DNA from: Sphaerodactylus townsendi
Taxonomy: Eukaryota
Assembly: GCF_021028975.2 (NCBI RefSeq)
Contig: NC_059429.1
Span: 38,998,001-39,062,000, forward strand
Direction of reading: 5' to 3'
DNA length: 64,000 nt
Shown one piece after another: positions 1,336-31,357 of this stretch. Under the pieces are notes generated by a model. The model ran no database searches and was not told where the DNA came from. It saw nothing but the letters and a program-made list of their open reading frames with translations. A program made the translations under genes and the position numbers. Within the stretch, counting starts at the first letter, position 1; every line of letters begins with the position of its first letter.

Positions 1336-1368
1336 CTGGCTCTGTACTTTGCTGCCATATTGAGTGCT
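1336..1368 (-). CDS. Micro-exon 15 (33 nt, phase 0): STQYGSKVQSQ
   Basis: ctgtttcccctgcag|...CAG|gtatga. Confidence 0.8.
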
Positions 1369-1744: not shown

Positions 1745-1777
1745 CTGAATATGCTTATAGTGAGAGTTGGCAAGTTG
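1745..1777 (-). CDS. Micro-exon 14 (33 nt, phase 0): QLANSHYKHIQ
   Basis: gatttctttgtag|...CAG|gtaagc. Confidence 0.78.
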
Positions 1778-4017: not shown

Positions 4018-4035
4018 CGCAGTGATTGATGTACG
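4018..4035 (-). CDS. Micro-exon 13 (18 nt, phase 0): RTSITA
   Basis: gttctctttacag|...GCG|gtaagg. Confidence 0.7.
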
Positions 4036-4218: not shown

Positions 4219-4257
4219 TTCTGGTGGGTAGGGGTTGCTAGGAGGATGCTGAAAAGT
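4219..4257 (-). CDS. Micro-exon 12 (39 nt, phase 0): TFQHPPSNPYPPE
   Basis: ttttgtttttttggcag|...GAA|gtaagt. Confidence 0.75.
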
Positions 4258-5604: not shown

Positions 5605-5634
5605 CTTTTTGGTATCTGACACAGTTGACACAGA
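5605..5634 (-). CDS. Micro-exon 11 (30 nt, phase 0): SVSTVSDTKK
   Basis: ctgttttctttatag|...AAG|gtatgt. Confidence 0.75.
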
Positions 5635-6815: not shown

Positions 6816-6851
6816 CTGCCCATATGAGCTGCTACTGTACGCTGTACCCCC
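6816..6851 (-). CDS. Micro-exon 10 (36 nt, phase 0): GGTAYSSSSYGQ
   Basis: gttttatttgtag|...CAG|gtaagg. Confidence 0.85.
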
Positions 6852-8674: not shown

Positions 8675-8716
8675 ATCACGGCAGCCATACTTGCTGTAGA
8701 CACTTGAAACTCCACC
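8675..8716 (-). CDS. Micro-exon 9 (42 nt, phase 0): GGVSSVYSKYGCRD
   Basis: ggttttttacacag|...GAT|gtaagt. Confidence 0.82.
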
Positions 8717-9717: not shown

Positions 9718-9765
9718 ACCAGCGCAGCCACCCTTTTTGATTCCTCCTTGGTACACTGAACCATC
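9718..9765 (-). CDS. Micro-exon 8 (48 nt, phase 0): DGSVYQGGIKKGGCAG
   Basis: ttattttcttccag|...GGT|gtaagc. Confidence 0.82.
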
Positions 9766-10267: not shown

Positions 10268-10309
10268 CTGCCTGCCAGAATAAGAGCCAGACGAAGAACC
10301 CTGATATAT
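10268..10309 (-). CDS. Micro-exon 7 (42 nt, phase 0): IYQGSSSGSYSGRQ
   Basis: ctgattgttgcag|...CAG|gtaagt. Confidence 0.85.
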
Positions 10310-11066: not shown

Positions 11067-11102
11067 CTTGGTACATTCACTGCTGCTTGCATAACTGCCA
11101 CC
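11067..11102 (-). CDS. Micro-exon 6 (36 nt, phase 0): GGSYASSSECTK
   Basis: taactttcag|...AAG|gtaagt. Confidence 0.85.
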
Positions 11103-11822: not shown

Positions 11823-11858
11823 CTGGCCACAGTTTATTCTTAGAGTAATACCTGCAGA
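11823..11858 (-). CDS. Micro-exon 5 (36 nt, phase 0): SAGITLRINCGQ
   Basis: ttttctttacag|...CAG|gtaaga; no stop; length a multiple of 3. Confidence 0.8.
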
Positions 11859-12590: not shown

Positions 12591-12738
12591 CTTCTTCCTG
12601 CTTTTGGGTGATACTTGGGCTGATTGAGATTCACCAACAATTTTGGAATCATCTTCTGCCTCACTGAAATTTCTAGGAAAGAGGACGACACTGGGAACAA
12701 CAACCCAGTATGTTTCAGGGTCTTGAAAAATGGTTGCT
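12591..12738 (-). CDS. Coding exon 4, Reeler C-terminal strands plus linker
   Basis: Acceptor ttatcttttcag|, donor AAG|gtttgt (a stop follows if read through). 148 nt, phase 2 to 0. ATIFQDPETYWVVVPSVVLFPRNFSEAEDDSKIVGESQSAQVSPKSRKK contains the Reeler AT-x-x-Q...YWV motif. Confidence 0.85.
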
Positions 12739-13770
12739 CTGAAAAGATAATAAATCATATTTTATTATGGTGATTATCTCCTATAGTGAAGCAAAGTCTA
12801 TGTTATGAAGGGGTTTGGGTTTTTTTAAGTTGCCTAAGGATGGGCATAGGGTTCCATTCAAAGCATATACTTTTCATGCAGAATGTCTCAGGTAAATCTC
12901 TGGCACCTCTAGTTTAAAGAAGATACTGAGTACAGGTGTTCAGAAAGCTCTTTTTCTGCCAGTTACCTTGGAGAACCAATTAGGGGAGACATTCATCCAT
13001 TCTGCACAGCACAAATAAGATGTCTGGAGGACATTTTAAAAGAGGCAACTTTTTTTGTCTGAACAGCACAAATAAGACATCCTGGGGACATCTTTAAAAA
13101 TCTGCCCTCTCATTTTTTTTGCCTGGACAGCACAAGCATCAGAGGAGAAATGAGGCTTTCCCCTCTCTGGTCAGTTTCCTCCTCAGCTTGTGCCTGACAT
13201 TTTGTGTGCTGCTGAAGGGATTCTCCCTGCCTCCATTTGCCCCATGATGTTAGCTCTGCAGGCACCAATCTGGGCACCTTTTCAGACCCCAAAAGCACAT
13301 AGTTGTACTCCACTTGTCCTGCCAATTCCGGCAATATATAGTTTTCCTATTTTTAATTCTTGATGAGGTGTCTGCAAAGCAACGCAGACATGCTATGAAA
13401 ATCTTAGCCACTTGGGTAGACCTTTTAGCATCTTCAAAATATGGTGGCTTGGGCTGAAATAAGGCATCCTGAGGACGTCTTGTGGAAAAAGTGTGTAGAG
13501 TTCCTCCACAAGATGCCTTCTTTTGCATCCTCAGGAATTCTTATTTGACTGTGACGAATGGACCATTATTTAGCTAAATAGGCTGATGAAAACTTCCTAT
13601 TTCAACTCATGTTTACCAAAAAATGCAAAATGAATTATGCATGTTACGCTAAATTTTATTTATCTATATTAATCACTTCCATTATATCACATGATATCAA
13701 ACTATTTGAAATAATAATCCCACTAAGTTACAAACATCCTTCTCATTTGCTAGTTTTTTCTTCCTATAAC

Positions 13771-13830
13771 TAATATAATATATAATAAATATAATATATA
13801 ATAATATATAATATAATATAATATAATAAA
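13771..13830. repeat. AT-rich microsatellite (ATATA)n
   Basis: Directly visible taatatataatatataata... run. Confidence 0.9.
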
Positions 13831-14056
13831 AAATAGCAAATGCAAAAAAATTAATGAGAGTCTATTTGGAGATCCTCTTTGACCTTGAGACCCAGGCCAA
13901 ATGCCCCTGACCAATACTGTGACATAAAATAAGGAACTGAAATGTCTGGGTAGAATGAAAACATGGAAAGGAAAAATGTTTGAGGAAGCCACAGAAAATC
14001 TGGGATTAAAAAATAAAGTAAAATTTTCAAATGATGATTTTCAGATATCTACTTAC

Positions 14057-14145
14057 ATAAATTGAATAGTTTTAGCATCAGGTGAAACCCAGTGTGCTGT
14101 TACGTCCTGTTTCGTATCCAAGTTTGTTTGAATTAATGCTGAATT
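14057..14145 (-). CDS. Coding exon 3, Reeler domain
   Basis: Acceptor tctttaatttcaaag|, donor AT|gtaagt. 89 nt, phase 0 to 2. NSALIQTNLDTKQDVTAHWVSPDAKTIQF(I) contains the Reeler K-x-x-V-x-x-x-W-x-x-P...I-x-F pattern. Confidence 0.9.
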
Positions 14146-14488
14146 CTTTGAAATTAAAGACAGGCATGAAAACATTATTTAGATATCTATATACTGGCTT
14201 ATTAAATAATTTAAATTTCACAACAATCCTGGAGCCCAAACATCAGATTCAAATGGCTATCCAAGAAATATACAAAACAAGATTTTGAATTCATTTTCCT
14301 AATGAAGACAAGGAATGTAAGGGCATACTAAAGTCTTTATCAATTTGAGGCAATATTTGAAAGCTGTTTCCTTCATCGCTCTTATTTTATTTTTAAAAAT
14401 TATTTCTGCTAGATTTAAATGGTACTCAGGATATTGTTTTTCACCTTTTTTGCATCCAATGCTATATTAAGCCCTGATCAGTGCCACA

Positions 14489-14955
14489 CAGTGGCGAAGC
14501 TACTAGGGGACAGGGTCTGGGGAGCACAAAAAATCACCCAGGCCCCTCTCCCTTTCCCTGCCCCCTCCGTGGCACCCCCCGCAGCGCCCCCCCCCGCGGC
14601 ACCCCCCATCCATTTTTTTCACATTTACCTTAGTTCCTTTCCTTTTTGAGAACTTTTTCAGGCTGCAAAAGGCCTGTTCTCAGTAAAAATGGCCTGAGGA
14701 ACTACAGTACCCAGGGGATCTTGGGGCTCACAAGGTCTCCTGGGAAGTATAGTTCCCATCAGGCCGTTTTTACTGAGAACAGGCCTTTTGCAGCCTGAAA
14801 AAGTTCTGAAAATGGAAAGGAACTAAGGTAAGTGTGGGAAAGGGAAAAGGGGAGGTGCCGTGAGGGGGGGTGCCGGGGAGGCGCGGGGGGCACTGCAGGG
14901 GGGGCGTAAAATATAGTATGCGCACCGGGCACAATTTGGCCCAGCTATGCCTCTG
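14489..14955. mobile_element. hAT MITE, internally palindromic
   Basis: TIR cagtggcg/tgcctctg; TSD gtgccaca on both sides; ~200-bp internal inverted repeat at 14625-14830. Confidence 0.85.
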
Positions 14956-15921
14956 GTGCCACATCAAGGATTGTTTTTTGTTCTAGAAAAGTCAGTTCAG
15001 AGATGCAAACTAAGAATATGCTCCACAACCTCTGGAGATGTTGGAGATTATTTTGAACAAATTCTTGGTTCATTTCAGTGGGGAGTTGACCAAGGCAGAA
15101 ATAATATCAAGGCACCATTTCTTTTACAACTTTTTAATACATTATATACAACAGTTGGGTATGGGGTGCCCACCCTGTGCAGCAGTCAGACATGAGTTAA
15201 GGTTCTCTTCAGTTTCCCCAGGTACAGGGCATGATTCAGTTCAGAACAGAAGCATGCATGAAGAAGGGGATTCAGCATTGTACCCCACATTATTCCCCAA
15301 CCTAAAATGGCTTGGGAGAGTGCTCCCAAGAGAACACACTGTTTTCCCCATTGAGCCAAATAGTGTTCCCAGACAGTGCAGGAGACTAGGCTGAAGACTG
15401 GGCACCATGCAGATGGGAAATGAAGAGAAACTGTCACTCATATGTGATTGATAAGCTCTTTTAGGTAGAGGAGTCCTATCACTCTCACAGAACTCTCATA
15501 CCAAGAAGAAACTGTTTGATCAGAATAAATACATTGTCCTTATATTGTCACATTCTGTTCATATCATTTGGATCTTTTTGTTCTGAAGTGATCAGGTGTG
15601 CGATGAACTACAAACTAACCATCTTTTTGCAAACAAATATTTAGCTCATAGAAAGTGTGGTATTATCCAATTTCATTTGCTCACTGAATTCTTTCTAGAA
15701 TTGTTCTCAATAGGAATGACAACAAATATGAAAGCAAAAGTGAACACACGTAACAAAAATACTGCAGTAAAAATAAATTAAACTTTTGAAAATGAGAAGA
15801 AAATAAACCCTTGCACAAAAAGTGTACCTTTCTCATATGTAGTGCACAGTTTGCACTCCAAACACTTGAAAGGATTTGATTCTTTTGACTTTTTTTAATC
15901 AGCTTGTAATTTTGAGACATA

Positions 15922-16439
15922 GGCCCTTTCCTCGCAGACACTTTAACATGTTTGGGAGCAGGAAATAAAACATTTCCTCCAAGGAGTTCTGCATTGTCGT
16001 TCCCCCCTTAAAAATGTTATATTTGCATCCTTAATGTGTCCTCTGTTCTAGCAATTCAGAACAGAAGCATGCATGAAGAAGGGGATTCAGATTATGTTCT
16101 AGCATTCTTTTGGCTGAAACATTTTTAAAAGGCTTCACTTGTGTGCTGTCCCTTTCAGATGCCATTTTGTGAATTCTTGCCTGAAGAAGCCCCTTACCCT
16201 GTTTTTGGAGAGTTTCAGATTGTTTTTGAGATCTTTGCAGGCTGAATTTTCACAGCATTGACTACAGAACACTCAGGGAACTGCAACATGAAGCTGTGAA
16301 GCCTGAAGCAGAAAATGGTGGCCAGGAACCAATTTAAGGGGGTGAGTGCGAACAAAAATGTGTGTGTGCAAGGGGGGGAGGTTGAAAACATTTTACTAGT
16401 GTTTTACAAACGTTTCAGGAGATTTGTGTGGAAAGGGCC
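15922..16439. mobile_element. Harbinger-like MITE
   Basis: ggccctttcc ... ggaaagggcc termini. Confidence 0.5.
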
Positions 16440-16676
16440 ATTGAGAGTTTTGAAACCAAATATGAACTATGTTGCACTTCCAGAAAATTTGATATGATTG
16501 AAACCACTACTCTTGGGTGATTCAACATTTACATTTCGCACCAGATCTTGGGCACTGCTCAGGATAAGCAGTCACCTCCACAGTAGTAAGTTGATGTAAA
16601 TGCAAAATACCAGCAGTCTGGTTCCACTCCAGTTCAACAGAAATATCTGGCTTATTTGAGGATCGAATGTCTAATG

Positions 16677-16775
16677 CAGGGGTAGGGAACCTGCGGCTCT
16701 CCAGATGTTCAGGAACTACAATTCCCATCAGCCTCTGGTAGGGGCTGATGGGAATTGTAGTTATTCTAGGTATCT
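16677..16775. mobile_element. Partial palindromic hAT MITE (CAGGGGTAGGGAAC family)
   Basis: Matches the full copy at 31561-31708. Confidence 0.75.
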
Positions 16776-17371
16776 GGAAAACAAGTTCTAGTCGAGATCT
16801 ATGACCACCATGTTTCATGTGAATAAAAACCATAAAAAACTAGTACGTTAATGACTTGGCAAGTGATGGCTATGATTTATAAACTACAGCTCCCAAAAAT
16901 TCTACAAAGAACTGTCTGTAAATGCTTCACACAATATTAAAACAGCAAATGGCTTTTATCCCACAAACCACCAACAGTGGTAGATATTCCCCACATTCTT
17001 CTTTCTCCCTGCAATTTCTTCCAGTCCCTACAATGTTTATTACTGGAGTCATAGGACCCACAGATAAACTGAAGTCTGAGTTGAAGCTTATAGTGAGGAT
17101 CTCCCCTTTCATTCTCATCCTTCTTCTCACTCTGACCTATGTATCTATATGGATGATTGCACAGGATGAAGAGGAATATGTGAACCATCTTTACTTATTC
17201 ATACAGCATTCTGCTGTTGGTTTGTTGGATAGAATCTAATTATATCTAAAACCAGTTGTCGCTAGAAATAGTGACTTTGCTGGAAGCACAAAAAGGATTG
17301 TTTTTCATGTATATTCCAGGATATGTAATTCCATGATATTATCTATCCAAACTGAAGAAATAAATACATAC

Positions 17372-17508
17372 TGAAAGGTTGTAACAGTCAAGGCTTTGCG
17401 TGTTTGGATCTGTGATCTGAAATGAACCAACTGGAATGTTTTCTTCAATGTCTCGAGCCTGTAGCATAAACCATTTAAATCCAACATCAGGTGTTCCTTC
17501 TATTTTCA
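17372..17508 (-). CDS. Coding exon 2, Reeler domain core
   Basis: Acceptor cttctccag|, donor TCA|gtatgt. 137 nt, phase 1 to 0. (V)KIEGTPDVGFKWFMLQARDIEENIPVGSFQITDPNTQSLDCYNLS matches the Reeler F-x-G-F-x-LQAR...VGSF...C pattern. Confidence 0.92.
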
Positions 17509-18268
17509 CTGGAGAAGCAGATATTGAGAATCATAAGCATAACATATTATATTCTGCATTTTAAAGGTATGATAGTGTTAGAGTTATGGCAAGTTTGGCA
17601 TTTTAAAGGATGATATTGTTAGAGTTATGGCAAGTTTGGCATTTAGACATGCTTCTTTCACATATACTTGGCATCAGTTCTCTATGACACAGTCTTTCAT
17701 GCATGACAAAAGGGATCGTAATTAACTGAAACTTGCTGGAGATATTGCCACTAAACTTGTCCTTTAATGGCTATGAAAGGCTCTGTCTGAGCAGCAGCTA
17801 TAGGTGGGTCTGTATAAAGAAAATGCAACATTTAGACTAGAAAAGCAAGAAATACAGAGCAGGAGCCATTGTTGTGAGCACCTAAAGAGTGCTAGATCTC
17901 TCTCTTCCTTTTGGTGTTTGATTAGCAGTAGGTGGTACTTGTAAATACAGCAAATACTATAAAGATACTATAAGACTCCCTTGTGCCAAGGGAAACAACC
18001 TGGATAAATGTTAGTCCCTGAACTGTATTATCATGATTCACCCTTCGGGGATAGGGTGGGATATAAATCCTAAATAAATAAATAATACTATATTACCTCA
18101 TACTTAGAACTGTAGTCTGCTTTACTTAGATATCTTCTGAAGTTGCTAACTATATTATTTTTATTCTGGCATAGAAACTATATTACTTTCTGAAATTGGG
18201 GAACATGAATCAACCAGTTTGTTTAATAATTCTCAGGTAAGAGATATCGTGCATATCATGCATACTTT

Positions 18269-18730
18269 AGGGATCATCTCTCCCTTTATATTCCTACTCG
18301 GCCTATGTGATCTGAAGAGGTAAATTTGCTGGTGGTCCCCAGCCCCTCAATGATACGACTAGCCTCTACTCGGACCAGGGGTTTTGCAGCCCTGGCCCCT
18401 GTCTGGTGGAACACTCTCCCTCCAGCCATCAGGGCCCTGAGGGATCTTGGACAGTTCCGCAAGGCCTGTAAAACAGAGCTGTTTCAACAGGCATTTTGGG
18501 GGGCGCCTCCCCTGCCATCCCCCTCATACCATCATAATTGGTTACCGCTATATTGCATCCAGTCCCCTCCCAGGAGGATAGTCGGTTCTTCAATTGCTAT
18601 CTGATTTTAGTTTTTTTCTGTCTTGTTCTGATGTTGTATTTGATTATTTCAGTTTTAATTATCCTATTGTAATTATGTTTTAATCGTTTTATCCTGTACG
18701 CCGCCCAGAGCCTTTCGGGGGTGGGTGTTT
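18269..18730 (+). mobile_element. L2-clade LINE 3' end, running into an assembly gap
   Basis: ORF remnant RGFAALAPVWWNTLPPAIRALRDLGQFRKACKTELF is typical of the L2 ORF2 C-terminus, followed by an AT-rich 3' UTR and gtacgccgcccagag. Confidence 0.75.
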
Positions 18731-18870
18731 NNNNNNNNNNNNNNNNNNNNNNNNNNNNNNNNNNNNNNNNNNNNNNNNNNNNNNNNNNNNNNNNNNNNNN
18801 NNNNNNNNNNNNNNNNNNNNNNNNNNNNNNNNNNNNNNNNNNNNNNNNNNNNNNNNNNNNNNNNNNNNNN
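18731..18870. other. Assembly gap (N run); further gaps at 51609-51744, 61388-61548 and 61839-62085
   Basis: N characters. Confidence 1.
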
Positions 18871-19781
18871 GATGGCTAAAAATCCCTATCAAGCATAATG
18901 AGCATTATTTAATATCAGCAATTTGCAGTATGGATGCAAATCGCATGGCCAGCCATTTAAAGCAATAATTTTAAATAAGCTCCATGCATTGCCTTTTCTG
19001 TGCATACAAGTTGTAGAAAAGTAAGAACCCATATGGTGAACTTAAGCTGAAGAACAGCATTGATGCAAACCTAGAACCCTGCATTTTCTTCATAAATGAT
19101 TATCATATATATTTAGAGAGCAATCCATGTGTATGTGCAAATAAACCATGGATGTGGCACAAGGGTGCACTGATGTGAGTGCCCCTTACACCAGTACAAG
19201 GGACAAATACACTGGCAGGACAACAAATATTCCAGCATCACCCCTGGCACAGACCCAAACATGAAAGCTTCCACTGAACCAGTGCTCCTCCACCATAGGA
19301 CACCGTGCCAGTGTAGGTGGGGGCTTTCCAAGGGCATTCCTGGGGACAGAGCAGTGGTGGGATTCTAATAATTTAACAACCGGTTTCCCCCCCCCCCCGC
19401 CACATGGCCCCCGCTGCCCACTTACCTGCTCTGGAGGAACTTCTTGTTGGGGTGGAGGGGGGCAACGGGGCCTTGCCGCCACTGCTCTGAAAGCCCCCTT
19501 GCTCCTCTGGGAAAGGGGGAAATGGGGCTTTTAGTGCCTCAGAGCAGCTGGGTGGCAAGGCACATGGCAGCTCCGGGGCTCTGAAAGCCACTTTTAACAA
19601 CCGGTTCGCCGAACTCAACAAAAAATTCTACCAAACCAGTGTGAACTGGCTGGATTAGACAAACCTCCTTTTTGATGTCGTGTGTAAGAAATACAAAGTC
19701 AGTTTATACATGGGACAGCCAGATAAAAGACCCTGTTCACTGGATGGCCTCAGGCAAGTGACTATTTCTGCTTAATGGTAG

Positions 19782-20558
19782 CAGAGGTGGGATCCAGCAG
19801 GTTCTCACAGGTTCCCGAGAGTAGGTTACTAATTATTTTTGTGTGCCGAGAGCGGGTTACTAATTGGTGATTTTGCCATGTGATTTTTGCCTTAGGCTTC
19901 GTTTCTAGGGAATTATACATGCTTAAGCGGTGAGATTTCCTTCCGAAGTATTTACTTCTGAGGGCCTTTCCCCACTTACCTTAAGCCCCGCGCTACTCTC
20001 TTTCCTCAGAGTGGCATTAGGGGTCCCCCGACTTACTCCGCACGACAGAGGCGGCGACAACACCGCAGCCGCCCTGAAGCGGCTGCAGCTATCCCGCCCC
20101 CTCGAAGCAGCGCCTTGGCATCCCTGAGTGCTCTTGTATGCTTGCAGCAGCGGTGACCCTTTAGCGCCAGAAGCGGGATGCGATGAGATACCCAGGCGCG
20201 CGCCAGGGATGTCGCGTGCTGAGCAGCGCGTGGCATAGGGGGGATCGTGAAGAGTGGGGAAACGCCCTTAGTTACGCCTCTCCTCTCAGCAGTAGCACAC
20301 AGAACTTGAAGCAGTCTAGCAGGAGGTGCACTGGTGTGCATGGCAGCCTGCGCCTGTGTGCATTTGTTTCCCGCCCAAGGACCAGCACAGCAGCTGCGTC
20401 CTTGCCACAGCCCTGCCCAGGAATGCCCCACCCAAGAATGCCTGGCCACGCCCTGTGGGTGCCCTTCGCCCAGCAACCCCATTGGTTGCTTTCACAGCCA
20501 CTGTTTGAATCCCACCCCCATGGGAACCTGTTACTAAAATTTTTGGATCCCACCACTG
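19782..20558 (+). mobile_element. hAT MITE (CAGTGGTGGGAT family) carrying a nested insertion at 19895-20267
   Basis: Colinear with the uninterrupted copy at 33267-33659 apart from the insertion. Confidence 0.85.
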
Positions 20559-21044
20559 CTCTCAGGCACCTACTGGCTTAGTGCCTTTGGTGCTAGAGAG
20601 AGGTTGAAGAAGACCTTTGGGACAGGAATTTGAGAGCTGAGGGAGACTTGAGAGAATTTGGTAAGTGAACTCCCTCCAATGAACTGAACTCTGAAGAGAT
20701 TAATGAAAGCATCTCGGGACAAAATGCCCTCTGAATCAGGAGGCATTTCCAAAAGTATTGTGTGTACAGCCACTTTCCTACAGAGTCTTCAGAAATCTAA
20801 GTGCAGAGGGGGTGGGTTGCTACATGATTTGGAGTGGAGTTGATGGAATACTTAAAAAAGTGGTAGCAGATGATTGCCAACTGGGTGATCAACTAGCAGC
20901 CTGGAGTCTTATACATGTTGCATTTCTACTAACAAGATCGTCAGACATAGCGTAACTCAACCTACTCAACTTCCTTTCAAGAACAAGAAAGCCAATAAGC
21001 TAGGAGAAATATTGTAGGAAAAACAGGATGTTGATACTATTTAC

Positions 21045-21240
21045 CTTTTACTTCTTTTCCTGGGTCATATTCATCTGATGATACAGAAATGTGATAGGGT
21101 GATTCGGATTCCTGTGGTTCTACAGAGTGGTTTGGCAACATCGATTCACAAGCTAGTGAAATATTCCCATATGGAAGGCAGCAGACTCGTGTGACGAAGA
21201 CCCCACAGAGCAGAAATGAAAAGAAGAGAATGTGCTTCAT
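21045..21240 (-). CDS. Coding exon 1 of a Reeler-domain (FRRS1-like / defense protein-like) secreted protein: signal peptide and Reeler N-terminus
   Basis: Acceptor gtttgtttcag|TCCAAG ATG (exon starts 21246). Translates MKHILFFSFLLCGVFVTRVCCLPYGNISLACESMLPNHSVEPQESESPYHISVSSDEYDPGKEVK: hydrophobic signal peptide plus the Reeler motif C-x-x-M-x-P-x-H...Q...SPY-x-I. Donor AAG|gtaaat, phase 1. Confidence 0.92.
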
Positions 21241-21290
21241 CTTGGACTGAAACAAACAACAAAATAGGCACATGGAATGTGAGTGACCAA

Positions 21291-28644: not shown

Positions 28645-31357
28645 GCAGCAAAAGGAAGAAGAGATATCAATACCAGGGGTGAAGCATAGTTTAACATTAG
28701 GAATATATTATCGTCCCCCTGACCAAAGCGCACAAGAGGATTCTGAGATGGAAAAGAAATTAGAGGCCAACAAAGCAAAATGTAGAGTGGTAATGGGAAG
28801 CGATTTAATATCTATATAAACTGGAAAAATGCATGTTCAGGTCATAGTAAGGAGAGAACATTCCTGGATATGCTAAATGACTGTGGCTTAGAGCAGATGG
28901 TTGTAGAACCAACCAGGGGGATGTGATCTAGATCTAATTCTATGTGGGCCCAGGACCACAGATGGAAGTCAGTGTTGTTGAGCCGATGAGAACAGCGACC
29001 ACAATGCTGTCAGATTCAGTATCTCTGCATGCAAACAAGTGACAACTACTAATGTAGTTACATTACAGCTAGAAAGGAAATTTCTCAAGATGAGGGGGAT
29101 AGTGCGCCAGGGAAGCTGAGGAAAATCAAGAGAGAGAGTCAAAATGTCAAGATGCTTGGAGGTTATTTAAAACACAGTCTTAAAAGCTCAACTGGAATGT
29201 GTTCCACAGGTTAGGAAAGGCAGCCCAGTCCAAAGCCACCATGGTTAACAGGGGCGTTGAGGAAATTATTAGGGAAAAAAGATGTCTTTTTTTAGAAAAT
29301 GGAAGTCCAACTTAACTGATAAAAGAATTACAGAGAACACAAATGGTGGCAAAGAGAGAAACAAGTTAGCTGTAAAGAGGCAAAAAAGGATTATGAGGCA
29401 GCATGGCTGTGAACATCAAAACCAGCAACAAACAGTTCTTCAAGGGTACATCAAAGCAGGAAGAGCCAGCAAGGGAAGCGGTAGGCCAGTTAGATGACAA
29501 AGGAACAAGGGTGTGCTAAAGATGACAGGAGTGCAGAAAAGCTGAATGAATTCTTTGCATCTGTCTTCACCCAAGGAGGTGAGAAAATTCTGCACCTGAA
29601 CCAAGCTTCTTAGGAGGCTGAGATCAGGAACTACTTGAAGATAGTGGTAGACAAGGAAGAAGTTCTAGCAGCCATTGATAAACTAAATGCTACCAACTCC
29701 CTGGCCCAGATTGCATTCACCCAAGAGTTCTTAAAGAGCTCAAGCATGAAGGTGGTGATGTTCTCACTTTAATATGCAACTTATCCCCTTGAAATCAGGC
29801 TCCATCCCACAAGAGACTGGAAGATGGCCAATGTCACACCAATCTTTAAGAAAGGATCACAAGGGGGGGACCCGGAAATTACAAGCCAGTCAGTTTGACA
29901 TCTGTTCCTGTGAGTAAATTAGTAGGAATCTGTCATTAAAGATAAAATTATAAAACATGTACAAAAGCAAAACCTGCTGAGAAAGAGTCAGCATGGCTTT
30001 TGCCAGAGGCAAATCTGTGCTGAGCTTACTAGAGTTCTTTGAGGGATGTAAAATAGGCATGTGGATGAGGGGGGGAACCAGTGGACATTGTCTACTTGGA
30101 TTTCCAAAAGGCTTTGACAAGTTCCTCTGAGACTATTGAGAAAACTCAGCAATGAAAGGAATAAGAGAGTCCTCTATGGATTAAAACTGGTTGAGGAACG
30201 GGAAGCAAGGAGTGGGTGTGGGAAATTCTCACAATGGAGATGTGGGGAGTGGTGTCCCCAAGGATCAGTATTGGGACCAGTGCTCTTTAACCTATTCATA
30301 AATGACCTGGAAGTAGGGGTGGGTAAGCGTGGTGGCCAAGTTTGCAGATGATACCAAATTATGTAAATTGGTGAGAACCACAAAGGATTACTTGAGGAGG
30401 GTCCAAGCGGTTATGATAAGTGGGTGAGTGGGCTAAGAAATGGCAAGTACAGTTCAATGTAGCAAATGAAGTGATGCATAGGGGCAAAAATCCAAACTTC
30501 ACATACAAGCTACAGAGGGGTCAGTGCTATCAGTCACAGACCAGGAAGGGATTTGAAGTCTTAATTGATAGTTCCTTAGAGAATGTCAACTCAATGTATG
30601 GCAGCTGTGAAAAAGGCAAACTCTATGCTGGGGATAATCAGGAAAGGAATTGATAATAAACTGCAAAAGATTGTCATGCCCTTATATAAAGCCGTGGATG
30701 CGTACACTTGGAGTACTGTGTCCAGTTCTGGTCACCACATCTCCAAAAAGGATATTGAAGAGATAGAAAAAGTGCAGAGAAGGGCAACGAGGATGATTGA
30801 GGGACTGGAGCACCTTCCTTATGGGGAAAGGCTGCAGCGTTTGGGACTCTTTAGTTTGGAGAGGAGACGTCTGAGGGATATGATTGAAGTCTATAAAATC
30901 ATGCATGGGGTAGAAAATGTTGACAGAAATTTTTCTCTCTTTCTCACAATACTAAAACCAGGGCATTCATTGAAAATGCTGGGAAAGAGGTGGGACTAAT
31001 AAAAGGAAAACACTTCTTCAATGCTAGCGTGTGATTGGTGTTTTGGAATATGCTGCCACAGGGTGGTGATGGCCACTAACCTGGATAGCTTTAAAAGGGG
31101 CTTGGACAGATTTATGGAGGGAGAACAGTCAATTTACTATGGCTACCAATCTTGATCCTTCTTTGATCTTGAGATTGCAAAATGCCTTTTAACAGTCCAA
31201 GGGTGCTTCGGGAGCAACAGCCTTGAAAGTCATTGCTTTCACATCCTACATGTGAACTCCCAAAGGCACCTGGTGGGCCACTGCGAGTAGCAGAGAGCTG
31301 GACTAGATGGACTCTGGTCTGATCCAGCTGGCTTGTTCTTATGTTCTTATGTTCTTA
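28645..31357 (+). mobile_element. 5'-truncated CR1 LINE (end of the APE domain, RT and 3' UTR), frameshifted
   Basis: GIYYRPP (APE), PQGSVLGPVLFNLFINDL, KFADDTKL-like and LGLFSLERRRLR motifs; (GTTCTTAT)n tail at 31335-31357. Confidence 0.95.

What the first reader, a model, noticed from the sequence alone, without database searches (positions are those of the whole stretch)
12591..21246. Apparent FRRS1-derived paralog that kept the Reeler exons but replaced DOMON/cytochrome b561
Seen: coding exons of 196/137/89/148 nt with phases 1,0,2,0, and the ATG 6 nt after an acceptor (so there are upstream non-coding exons). From memory, the first coding exons of vertebrate FRRS1 have very similar sizes and phases, which needs verifying. 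In FRRS1 the Reeler domain is followed by DOMON and cytochrome b561 domains. No such exons are recognisable here; the micro-exon tail follows instead. Inference: a lineage-specific duplicate with a new domain architecture that pipelines may mislabel as 'ferric-chelate reductase 1' or 'defense protein'.
Basis: partly seen in the sequence, partly recalled or inferred. Interest (0 to 1): 0.8.

Follow-up and report, generated by a model that had tools for sequence, protein, structure and literature searches.

The report
Sauropsid Reeler gene from FRRS1-like duplicate
This is an intact lizard (gecko-like) gene for a secreted protein whose Reeler-domain head was copied from a neighbouring iron-reductase-like gene, with the enzyme part replaced by a long tail built from tiny exons; reptiles and birds all carry it under misleading automatic names, and I found no study of it.

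Summary
On the minus strand, four coding exons of 196/137/89/148 nt (phases 1,0,2,0) encode a signal peptide and a Reeler domain. The ATG lies 6 nt after an acceptor. The N gap lies inside intron 1 and hides no exon.

- The gene belongs to a family ("X") found in lizards, snakes, turtles, a crocodile and birds. Members carry a Reeler head, a conserved polybasic motif and 10-70 phase-0 micro-exons.
- X has no DOMON or cytochrome b561 domain.
- In a turtle, X lies 47 kb downstream of, and in tandem with, a full Reeler-DOMON-b561 gene ("putative ferric-chelate reductase 1"). That gene's Reeler exons are 199/137/92/85 nt with the same phases.
- In duck, X lies between AGL and SLC35A3.
- Trees make X monophyletic (100/100) and sister to the sauropsid FRRS1-like genes (91-93% bootstrap).
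- Squamates have two copies. The window holds "Xb", 88% identical to the second half of a fused Euleptes gecko model.

REELD1 maps to another locus. Its sequence and that of canonical FRRS1 could not be fetched. No RNA data were available, and function is inferred. The scan noted the tail on this same window (s1-748457, s1-748531), not on other DNA.

The parts
21045..21246 (-). First coding exon. It has 6 nt of 5' leader (21241-21246) after an AG acceptor, then ATG at 21240 and 196 coding nt. It encodes the signal peptide and the start of the Reeler domain, and ends in phase 1.
18731..18870 (.). Assembly gap inside intron 1, flanked by repeat sequence. It is not coding.
   Evidence: Orthologue residues are contiguous across the exon 1/2 junction.
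17372..17508 (-). Coding exon 2, 137 nt, ending in phase 0. It encodes the Reeler core (GFKWFMLQAR...).
14057..14145 (-). Coding exon 3, 89 nt, ending in phase 2. Reeler domain.
12591..12738 (-). Coding exon 4, 148 nt, ending in phase 0. It encodes the end of the Reeler domain, a linker and the conserved polybasic motif KSRKK. This is the point where the FRRS1-like gene continues with DOMON exons.
11823..11858 (-). Micro-exon 1 of the tail (36 nt, SAGITLRINCGQ). It is conserved in all family members.
11067..11102 (-). Tail micro-exon (36 nt), phase 0.
10268..10309 (-). Tail micro-exon (42 nt), phase 0.
9718..9765 (-). Tail micro-exon (48 nt), phase 0.
8675..8716 (-). Tail micro-exon (42 nt, GGVSSVYSKYGCRD), 100% identical to Euleptes.
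6816..6851 (-). Tail micro-exon (36 nt), phase 0.
5605..5634 (-). Tail micro-exon (30 nt), phase 0.
4219..4257 (-). Tail micro-exon (39 nt, ...NPYPPE), phase 0.
4018..4035 (-). Tail micro-exon (18 nt), phase 0.
   Evidence: It matches the P0005 order.
1745..1777 (-). Tail micro-exon (33 nt, QLANSHYKHIQ), phase 0.
1336..1368 (-). Last tail micro-exon seen (33 nt). The gene continues beyond the left end of the window.

Best explanation
The window holds the 5' two-fifths of an intact gene of a sauropsid-wide family, here called X. The window copy is the squamate paralogue Xb.

Origin. X arose as a tandem copy of an FRRS1-like gene with Reeler, DOMON and cytochrome b561 domains. Databases call that gene 'putative ferric-chelate reductase 1'. 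X kept the 5'-UTR intron just before the ATG and the four Reeler exons, with the same intron positions and phases. After the phase-0 intron that follows exon 4, the DOMON and b561 exons were replaced by an array of symmetric (phase-0) micro-exons of 18-48 nt.

Product (inferred from sequence). The protein has a cleaved signal peptide and an N-glycosylated Reeler beta-sandwich head. Next comes a conserved polybasic motif ([KR]x[KR][KR]K), which may be a convertase-cleavage or glycosaminoglycan-binding site. Then follows a G/S/Q/Y-rich, cysteine-punctuated, low-complexity tail. Because every tail exon is a skippable cassette, the tail length can vary. In turtles and birds the last exon encodes a conserved hydrophobic C-terminus, which suggests a GPI or membrane anchor.

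Function. Without DOMON and b561 the protein cannot be a transmembrane ferric reductase. I take it to be an extracellular or cell-surface binding or matrix protein: a Reeler head on a variable stalk. Shown here: the exon structure, family membership, synteny in duck and turtle, the tree and the absence of the reductase domains. Inferred: secretion, processing, anchoring and function.
For: - Exons and Reeler domain.
- Orthologues with the same head and tail in lizards, snakes, turtles, a crocodile and birds.
- Exact exon maps. Pelodiscus X has 196/137/92/112 nt plus 24 phase-0 micro-exons. Elgaria has 196/137/89/145 nt plus micro-exons. Duck has 196/137/92/109 nt plus about 69 micro-exons, 76 coding exons in all.
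- The FRRS1-like neighbour has 199/137/92/85 nt, phases 1,0,2,0, followed by DOMON and b561 exons.
- Tandem arrangement 47 kb apart on one strand in Pelodiscus.
- Duck order AGL -> X -> SLC35A3. Willisornis has a fused X+SLC35A3+MFSD14A model followed by SASS6.
- An AG acceptor lies 0-6 nt before the ATG in all four genes examined.
- Pfam finds only Reeler in full-length X proteins, but Reeler+DOMON+b561 in the neighbour type.
- No DOMON or b561 relic is present in the window or in the X loci.
- Trees: X 100/100, sister to sauropsid FRRS1-like at 91-93/94, Xa and Xb each 100, and the window groups with the Euleptes second half at 88% identity.
- The polybasic motif is present in 16 of 16 X proteins and absent in the Pelodiscus FRRS1-like protein, the only neighbour-type protein scanned.
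- The conserved hydrophobic C-terminus is seen in turtles and birds.
- 30-50 RefSeq isoforms per bird gene.
- The closest solved fold by sequence is the F-spondin reeler domain, E 4e-7.
Against: - No RNA run holds this locus, so splicing, the 5' exon and expression in this animal are unverified.
- Canonical FRRS1 and mammalian REELD1 sequences were not in the tree.
- The AU test does not reject an older origin of X (p 0.28).
- The 3' end of the gene lies outside the window. Squamate models end differently from turtle and bird models, so the anchor is not shown for Xb.
- Fused models with the upstream paralogue (Euleptes) and with SLC35A3 leave open how independent the transcription units are.
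- Function is pure inference.
Confidence: 0.8

Rival explanations
1. It is the sauropsid orthologue of mammalian REELD1, a named Reeler-only gene, so it is an already named gene rather than an FRRS1-derived family of its own.
For: One bird orthologue was auto-named 'RELD1 protein, partial' (P0073). REELD1 is also a Reeler protein without DOMON or b561 (from memory).
Against: - Cattle REELD1 lies on BTA17 next to HHIP/ANAPC10/IL15 (PMC11122073), whereas X lies between AGL and SLC35A3.
- Mallard has a gene named REELD1 (PMC8692775), while its X gene is 'uncharacterized protein' or is fused to SLC35A3.
- Seven other bird orthologues in the same list were auto-named FRRS1.
- The exhaustive exon-1 search returned 45 hits. 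None of those I named or read is mammalian, although invertebrate Reeler proteins scored.
Confidence: 0.06
2. The four exons are not an independent gene. They are internal or alternative exons of a larger transcription unit: read-through from the upstream paralogue Xa, or an upstream module of SLC35A3.
For: The Euleptes RefSeq model P0057 fuses Xa and Xb in frame. The 6 nt between the acceptor and the ATG in the window (TCC AAG) are in frame and free of stops. Fused Reeler+SLC35A3 models exist in duck, turtle, swallow and antbird.
Against: - Exon 1 starts with its own Met and a typical signal peptide, conserved in all family members, including species with one copy.
- Elgaria and P0005 are modelled as stand-alone Xb proteins.
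- Turtle and bird X genes have their own conserved terminal exon and stop.
- Fusions of neighbouring same-strand genes are a common prediction artefact.
Confidence: 0.08
3. It is a decaying or non-functional duplicate that happens still to be open.
For: - The Xb stem branch is long (0.52).
- The near-invariant His of the 'VSH' motif is Gln in both gecko Xb copies.
- No expression data are available.
Against: - All 15 exons seen are open, with canonical splice sites.
- Head and tail exons are 67-100% identical to Euleptes Xb, with the tail as conserved as the head.
- All invariant Reeler residues of the family alignment are kept.
- Xb is retained in both Gekkota and Anguimorpha.
Confidence: 0.04
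4. It is still a ferric-chelate reductase whose DOMON and b561 exons lie beyond the left end of the window.
For: The gene does run off the window.
Against: - Full-length orthologues of 488-1145 aa contain only Reeler.
- The gene downstream of X is SLC35A3.
- No DOMON or b561 relic is present in three complete X loci.
Confidence: 0.02

Closest known systems
FRRS1 / SDR2-type ferric-chelate reductases (Reeler-DOMON-cytochrome b561), specifically the 'putative ferric-chelate reductase 1' (zgc:163022-type) genes of fish, frogs, turtles and lizards
   Same: - N-terminal signal peptide and Reeler domain.
- An acceptor just before the ATG.
- Four Reeler exons with identical intron positions and phases (199/137/92/85 against 196/137/89/148 nt).
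- Tandem neighbours in the turtle.
- Nearest relatives in the tree.
   Different: X has no DOMON and no cytochrome b561 domain, so no haem-binding membrane part. Instead it has a polybasic motif and a micro-exon-encoded low-complexity tail. I did not resolve whether the 'putative FRRS1' type is the true FRRS1 orthologue or a paralogue.
REELD1 (reeler domain containing 1)
   Same: A vertebrate protein with a Reeler domain and no reductase domains (from memory).
   Different: It is at a different locus: cattle BTA17 near HHIP/ANAPC10, against AGL-SLC35A3 for X. Birds have both genes. The sequence comparison was not done.
Invertebrate secreted single-Reeler defence proteins (Hdd11/Noduler, tick PIXR, crayfish and shrimp Reeler proteins)
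   Same: They are secreted proteins with a single N-terminal Reeler domain. Pipelines transfer this name to family members (Emydura 'defense protein Hdd11-like'). They are a functional analogy for a binding head (abstracts of PMC10149183, PMC12113285, PMC5543126 as listed).
   Different: They lack the micro-exon tail, fall in the outgroup position in the tree, and are not orthologous.
S100-fused-type and cornified-envelope proteins (hornerin, filaggrin-2, loricrin)
   Same: Only the composition of the tail matches (G/S/Q/Y-rich). This drives the automatic names 'hornerin-like', 'filaggrin-2-like' and 'loricrin-like'.
   Different: X has no S100/EF-hand domain. It has a signal peptide and Reeler head, dozens of micro-exons instead of one large repeat exon, and lies at the AGL-SLC35A3 locus.
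F-spondin (Spondin-1) reeler domain, PDB 2ZOU/3COO/2ZOT
   Same: It is the closest solved structure by profile search (E about 4e-7), so the head should have the same beta-sandwich fold.
   Different: It is only a distant sequence relative, and the rest of the protein is different.

Membership tests
Reeler domain (Pfam PF02014) | Match to the family profile above the curated cut-off | tested here: met
   Exon 1 scores 28.7 bits and exon 2 scores 24.6 bits, each alone above the 21-bit cut-off. Orthologues match the whole profile (1-131) with 85-190 bits.
Reeler domain (Pfam PF02014) | Conserved cysteine pair and core motif (GF..LQAR, VGxF) | tested here: met
   Cys31 and Cys107 and the invariant columns of alignments A1 and A2 are present in the 190-aa translation. 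The near-invariant His of 'VSH' is Gln in the gecko Xb copies.
FRRS1-type ferric-chelate reductase | DOMON domain after the Reeler domain | tested here: not met
   tblastn finds no hit in the window. Pfam finds no DOMON in full-length orthologues. No relic is present in three X loci.
FRRS1-type ferric-chelate reductase | Cytochrome b561 transmembrane domain | tested here: not met
   Same tests as for DOMON. The FRRS1-like controls P0249 and P0230 do show it.
FRRS1-type ferric-chelate reductase | Shared exon-intron structure of the Reeler part | tested here: met
   199/137/92/85 nt with phases 1,0,2,0 in Pelodiscus 'putative FRRS1', against 196/137/89/148 nt here. Canonical mammalian FRRS1 was not tested.
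REELD1 orthologue | Conserved chromosomal neighbourhood | tested here: not met
   X lies between AGL and SLC35A3 in duck. Cattle REELD1 lies near HHIP/ANAPC10/IL15 (PMC11122073).
REELD1 orthologue | Groups with REELD1 in a Reeler-domain tree | not tested
   No REELD1 sequence could be fetched.
Sauropsid Reeler-plus-micro-exon-tail family (X; unnamed) | Four Reeler exons, then a polybasic motif at the end of exon 4, then a conserved first micro-exon (xxxIxLxIxCxx) and a phase-0 micro-exon array | tested here: met
Sauropsid Reeler-plus-micro-exon-tail family (X; unnamed) | Falls inside the family clade | tested here: met
   X is supported at 100/100. The window falls inside Xb (100/100), next to the Euleptes second half.
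S100-fused-type proteins (hornerin, filaggrin-2) | N-terminal S100/EF-hand domain | tested here: not met
   Pfam finds only Reeler in proteins labelled hornerin-like (P0018) and in four other full-length X proteins (P0005, P0007, P0057, P0095).

The most novel reading that the evidence does not exclude
Reptiles and birds share an unstudied gene family made by exon replacement. A tandem copy of an FRRS1-like reductase gene kept its four Reeler exons and swapped the DOMON and b561 part, at a phase-0 intron, for 10-70 cassette micro-exons. These encode a G/S/Q/Y/C-rich tail that can be spliced into dozens of length variants. The family was duplicated again in squamates, and the window holds the faster-evolving copy. 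It may be a new kind of variable-length surface or matrix protein specific to sauropsids and lost or never present in mammals.
Probability: 0.6. Interest if true: 0.65.

Novelty: new variant of a known kind. Interest (0 to 1): 0.6.

Why it matters
- It is a clean, datable example of a new protein architecture made by tandem duplication plus exon replacement at a phase-compatible intron. Parent and daughter are still side by side in turtles.
- The daughter gene has one of the longest arrays of symmetric micro-exons I know of (about 70 in duck) and dozens of annotated isoforms.
- It is conserved across roughly 280 million years of sauropsid evolution (age from memory, not tested here), yet it has no proper name and, in my searches, no literature.
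- Databases spread at least ten misleading names for it: ferric-chelate reductase, defense protein Hdd11, hornerin, filaggrin-2, loricrin, spidroin-2, sericin, dentin sialophosphoprotein and others. It is also fused in some models to SLC35A3 or to its own paralogue. Correct naming would clean up reptile and bird annotations.
- A possible chicken member (LOC424473, 'hornerin-like', at least 41 variants) changes in wooden-breast muscle. That would give the family a first phenotype link if the identity is confirmed.

Tried and rejected
- RNA evidence. The look-up of sequencing runs found only four DNA-type runs from one study and no RNA.
- Exon 1 against PDB sequences found nothing meaningful.
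- ORF listing of 21.3-64 kb found only repeat-derived ORFs and no neighbouring gene.
- tblastn of fused Reeler+SLC35A3 proteins on the window found no SLC35A3 or MFSD14A exon.
- tblastn for the upstream paralogue's (Xa) exons at 21-64 kb gave nothing convincing.
- Elgaria locus flanks showed no neighbours within 10 kb.
- Looking up Corvus isoform P0011 returned 'not on record'.
- The alignment-based protein search, meant to reach canonical FRRS1 and REELD1, listed only its best 120 hits, and these are FRRS1-like proteins ('putative FRRS1' type). REELD1 and canonical FRRS1 therefore stayed out of the tree.
- The protein atlas search on the turtle tail gave no usable hit.
- Paper searches for the LOC numbers of six orthologues, for LOC424473, and for 'Reelin domain-containing protein' found nothing on this family.
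- The idea that the short 'putative ferric-chelate reductase 1' proteins P0017 and P0045 are a separate stand-alone gene was dropped. P0045 groups with the full-length FRRS1-like genes in the trees, and the P0017 sequence closely resembles the Pelodiscus FRRS1-like protein P0249 by eye.
- Joined model. Exons were searched one at a time by reference. The joined 190-aa translation was built only inside scripts from window.fa, for local alignment and trees.

Full report
**1. What is in the sequence**

The feature lies on the minus strand. The first coding exon begins at 21246, directly after 'tttcag', and the ATG is at 21240. The coding part runs to 21045 (196 nt) and is followed by GTAAAT. The next exons are 17372-17508 (137 nt), 14057-14145 (89 nt) and 12591-12738 (148 nt). 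All have AG/GT borders.

Searched one exon at a time by reference, exon 1 and exon 2 each pass Pfam's Reeler cut-off alone (28.7 and 24.6 bits, against a cut-off of 21).

The 190-aa product starts with a typical signal peptide (by inspection). It has four N-glycosylation sequons and keeps the Cys31/Cys107 pair.

No DOMON or cytochrome b561 exon is detectable anywhere in the 64 kb with four full-length FRRS1-like queries.

Downstream, eleven phase-0 micro-exons of 18-48 nt follow, down to 1336. All have AG/GT borders. No stop is reached, so the gene leaves the window on the left.

**2. The gap**

The N run at 18731-18870 lies in intron 1, more than 1 kb from either exon, next to repeat sequence. 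In orthologues, the residues encoded by exons 1 and 2 are contiguous. Nothing coding is hidden there and no frame depends on it. I did not try to fill it.

**3. Relatives**

An exhaustive phmmer search with exon 1 found 45 proteins. Their sequences and names, and two word searches seeded with a turtle and a swan member, show a family I call X. Members carry a Reeler head followed by the same tail motifs (...INC....VYSKYGCRD..NPYPPE..).

X is found in:
- lizards (Elgaria, Lacerta, Podarcis, Zootoca, several geckos);
- snakes (Python, Laticauda, Notechis, Pseudonaja);
- turtles;
- Crocodylus;
- many birds.

Pfam finds only Reeler in full-length members of 488-1145 aa.

The names given by pipelines are a collection of misnomers: 'ferric-chelate reductase 1-like', 'putative ferric-chelate reductase 1', 'FRRS1 reductase, partial', 'RELD1 protein, partial', 'putative defense protein Hdd11-like', 'hornerin-like' (up to isoform X50), 'filaggrin-2-like', 'loricrin-like', 'spidroin-2-like', 'sericin 1-like' and 'dentin sialophosphoprotein-like'.

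**4. Gene structure in relatives**

I mapped annotated proteins exactly onto their own loci.
- Pelodiscus X: 196/137/92/112 nt (phases 1,0,2,0), then 24 phase-0 exons. The last is a 99-nt exon encoding a hydrophobic C-terminus.
- Elgaria: 196/137/89/145 nt, then 36/36/42/48/42/30/39 nt.
- Duck: 76 coding exons, of which about 69 are micro-exons of 18-45 nt.

The window's structure is therefore the family's structure.

The Euleptes europaea model P0057 is a fusion of two genes. Its second half (residues 495-799) matches the window's four exons at 80-91% identity and its micro-exons at 67-100% identity. The window therefore comes from a gecko-like lizard, as another agent of this scan also concluded (s1-743312).

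**5. Where the family came from**

*Tandem neighbour.* In Pelodiscus, a full Reeler-DOMON-b561 gene (P0249, 'putative ferric-chelate reductase 1') lies 47 kb upstream of X on the same strand. Its Reeler exons are 199/137/92/85 nt with phases 1,0,2,0. After the phase-0 intron the DOMON exons begin.

*Shared 5' intron.* All four genes examined have an AG acceptor 0-6 nt before the ATG.

*Swap point.* The two gene types share every intron of the head. They diverge exactly at a phase-0 intron, after which every X exon is phase 0-0.

*No relics.* X loci hold no relics of DOMON or b561, and the FRRS1-like locus holds no relics of the tail.

*Synteny.* In duck, X lies between AGL and SLC35A3, all on one strand, with no FRRS1-like exons in between. 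In Willisornis a fused model joins X, SLC35A3 and MFSD14A and is followed by SASS6. From memory, human 1p21.2 reads FRRS1-AGL-SLC35A3-MFSD14A-SASS6. If so, X sits in the FRRS1 neighbourhood.

*Trees.* Maximum-likelihood trees of the Reeler domain used the window row, joined only inside the script. X is monophyletic (100/100) and sister to the turtle and lizard FRRS1-like genes (93/94 and 91/94). Frog and fish genes fall outside. An AU test does not reject tetrapod FRRS1-like genes being one clade without X (p 0.28). An origin in the sauropsid or amniote stem is therefore favoured but not proven.

**6. Two copies in squamates**

Within X, squamate sequences form two fully supported groups.
- Xa: geckos, lacertids and snakes.
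- Xb: the window, the Euleptes second half, Elgaria and P0005.

Euleptes has both copies, fused in one model, which implies tandem copies on one strand. Xa+Xb as one clade has weak support (74/60), which is compatible with a squamate-stem duplication.

Xb has a long stem branch (0.52). In the two geckos it has lost the near-invariant His of the 'VSH' motif.

**7. REELD1**

I could not obtain a REELD1 sequence. The indirect evidence argues against orthology.
- Cattle REELD1 lies on BTA17 at 12.1 Mb, among HHIP, ANAPC10 and IL15 (PMC11122073), not near AGL.
- Mallard has a gene named REELD1 (PMC8692775), while its X gene is 'uncharacterized' or merged with SLC35A3.
- Seven other bird orthologues in the same list were auto-named after FRRS1, and one after RELD1.
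- No mammalian protein reached E 0.001 with exon 1 among the hits I named or read, although invertebrate Reeler proteins did.

**8. How it probably works**

Shown:
- The protein has a Reeler head whose closest solved relative is the F-spondin reeler domain.
- It has no reductase domains.
- A polybasic motif [KR]x[KR][KR]K lies at the end of exon 4 in 16 of 16 X proteins, and is absent in the Pelodiscus FRRS1-like protein, the only neighbour-type protein scanned.
- A conserved first micro-exon follows (xxxIxLxIxCxx).
- The tail is rich in S (19-32%), G (10-24%), Q and Y, with spaced cysteines.
- Turtles and birds have a conserved hydrophobic C-terminal peptide.
- Birds have tens of annotated isoforms.

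Inferred: the protein is secreted and glycosylated. The head is a binding module. The polybasic site is either cut by a convertase or binds glycosaminoglycans. The tail is a flexible stalk or matrix segment, possibly cross-linked, whose length is set by cassette-exon choice. The C-terminus anchors the protein (GPI or membrane) at least in turtles and birds.

The protein cannot be a b561-type reductase. Invertebrate single-Reeler proteins bind microbes and limit biofilms (abstracts of PMC10149183, PMC12113285 and PMC5543126, as listed). That is an analogy, not evidence.

One lead on expression comes from chicken. The 'hornerin-like' gene LOC424473 has at least 41 transcript variants, 36 of which fall 3.4-4.1-fold in wooden-breast pectoral muscle (PMC8273767). 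Its identity with X is likely from the name and the isoform count, but I did not verify it.

**9. Limits**

- No RNA data exist for this animal in the runs served.
- The spliced protein was not sent to any search tool.
- I did not resolve whether the FRRS1-like 'putative ferric-chelate reductase 1' gene is the true FRRS1 orthologue or a paralogue.
- The 3' half of the gene, its neighbours in this genome, and a separate intact FRRS1 could not be checked from this window.

**10. Verdict**

The interpretation (an FRRS1-derived paralogue with a replaced C-terminal part, mislabelled by pipelines) is right in substance. However, the event is old and shared by all sauropsids, and the window copy is a squamate paralogue of it. 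I found no paper on the family. I rate it a new variant of a known kind, with interest 0.6.

Noticed in passing
window 21241-21246: The 6 nt between the acceptor and the ATG (TCC AAG) are in frame and free of stops. Splicing from an upstream phase-0 micro-exon, as in the fused Euleptes Xa+Xb model P0057, would therefore stay in frame here too.
   Followed up: partly
window 14564-14904: A roughly 340-bp palindromic element in intron 2. It has 83-nt arms that are 93% complementary (14615-14697 and 14759-14841), flanked by C-rich and G-rich outer arms. A similar G/C-rich hairpin-like stretch lies near 19380-19560.
   Followed up: partly
window 14100-14130 (exon 3, residue about 117): The near-invariant His of the Reeler 'VSH' motif is Gln (ALIQ) in the window and in Euleptes Xb. 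It is kept in Elgaria and P0005 Xb, in Xa and in the FRRS1-like genes.
   Followed up: partly
L002 67482-69851 (duck locus): Three tandem copies, about 1094 bp apart, each carry a pair of tail micro-exons. The tail therefore grows by cassette duplication. The duck model has 76 coding exons.
   Followed up: partly
L002 5951-39378 (duck): There are no FRRS1-like (DOMON/b561) exons between the end of AGL and the first Reeler exon of X. Birds seem to have lost the tandem parent gene that turtles and lizards keep.
   Followed up: partly
PMC8273767, supplement file 2: Chicken LOC424473 'hornerin-like' has at least 41 transcript variants, 36 of them down 3.4-4.1-fold in wooden-breast muscle. It may be the chicken member of this family. 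The identity was not verified.
   Followed up: partly
window 30583-30999 (+): A 138-aa ORF that looks like the C-terminal part of a LINE reverse transcriptase (judged by eye only, not searched). The rest of 21.3-64 kb shows only repeat-like ORFs and no neighbouring gene.
   Followed up: no
window 13769-13811: A simple AT-rich repeat in intron 3 tripped the reads tool's filter.
   Followed up: no
another piece of this genome (finding s1-736262): The scan notes a separate stand-alone, probably GPI-anchored Reeler gene between AKAP14 and NDUFA1. Short Reeler-only proteins of fish and amphibians (P0019, P0040, P0016) may be its relatives.
   Followed up: no
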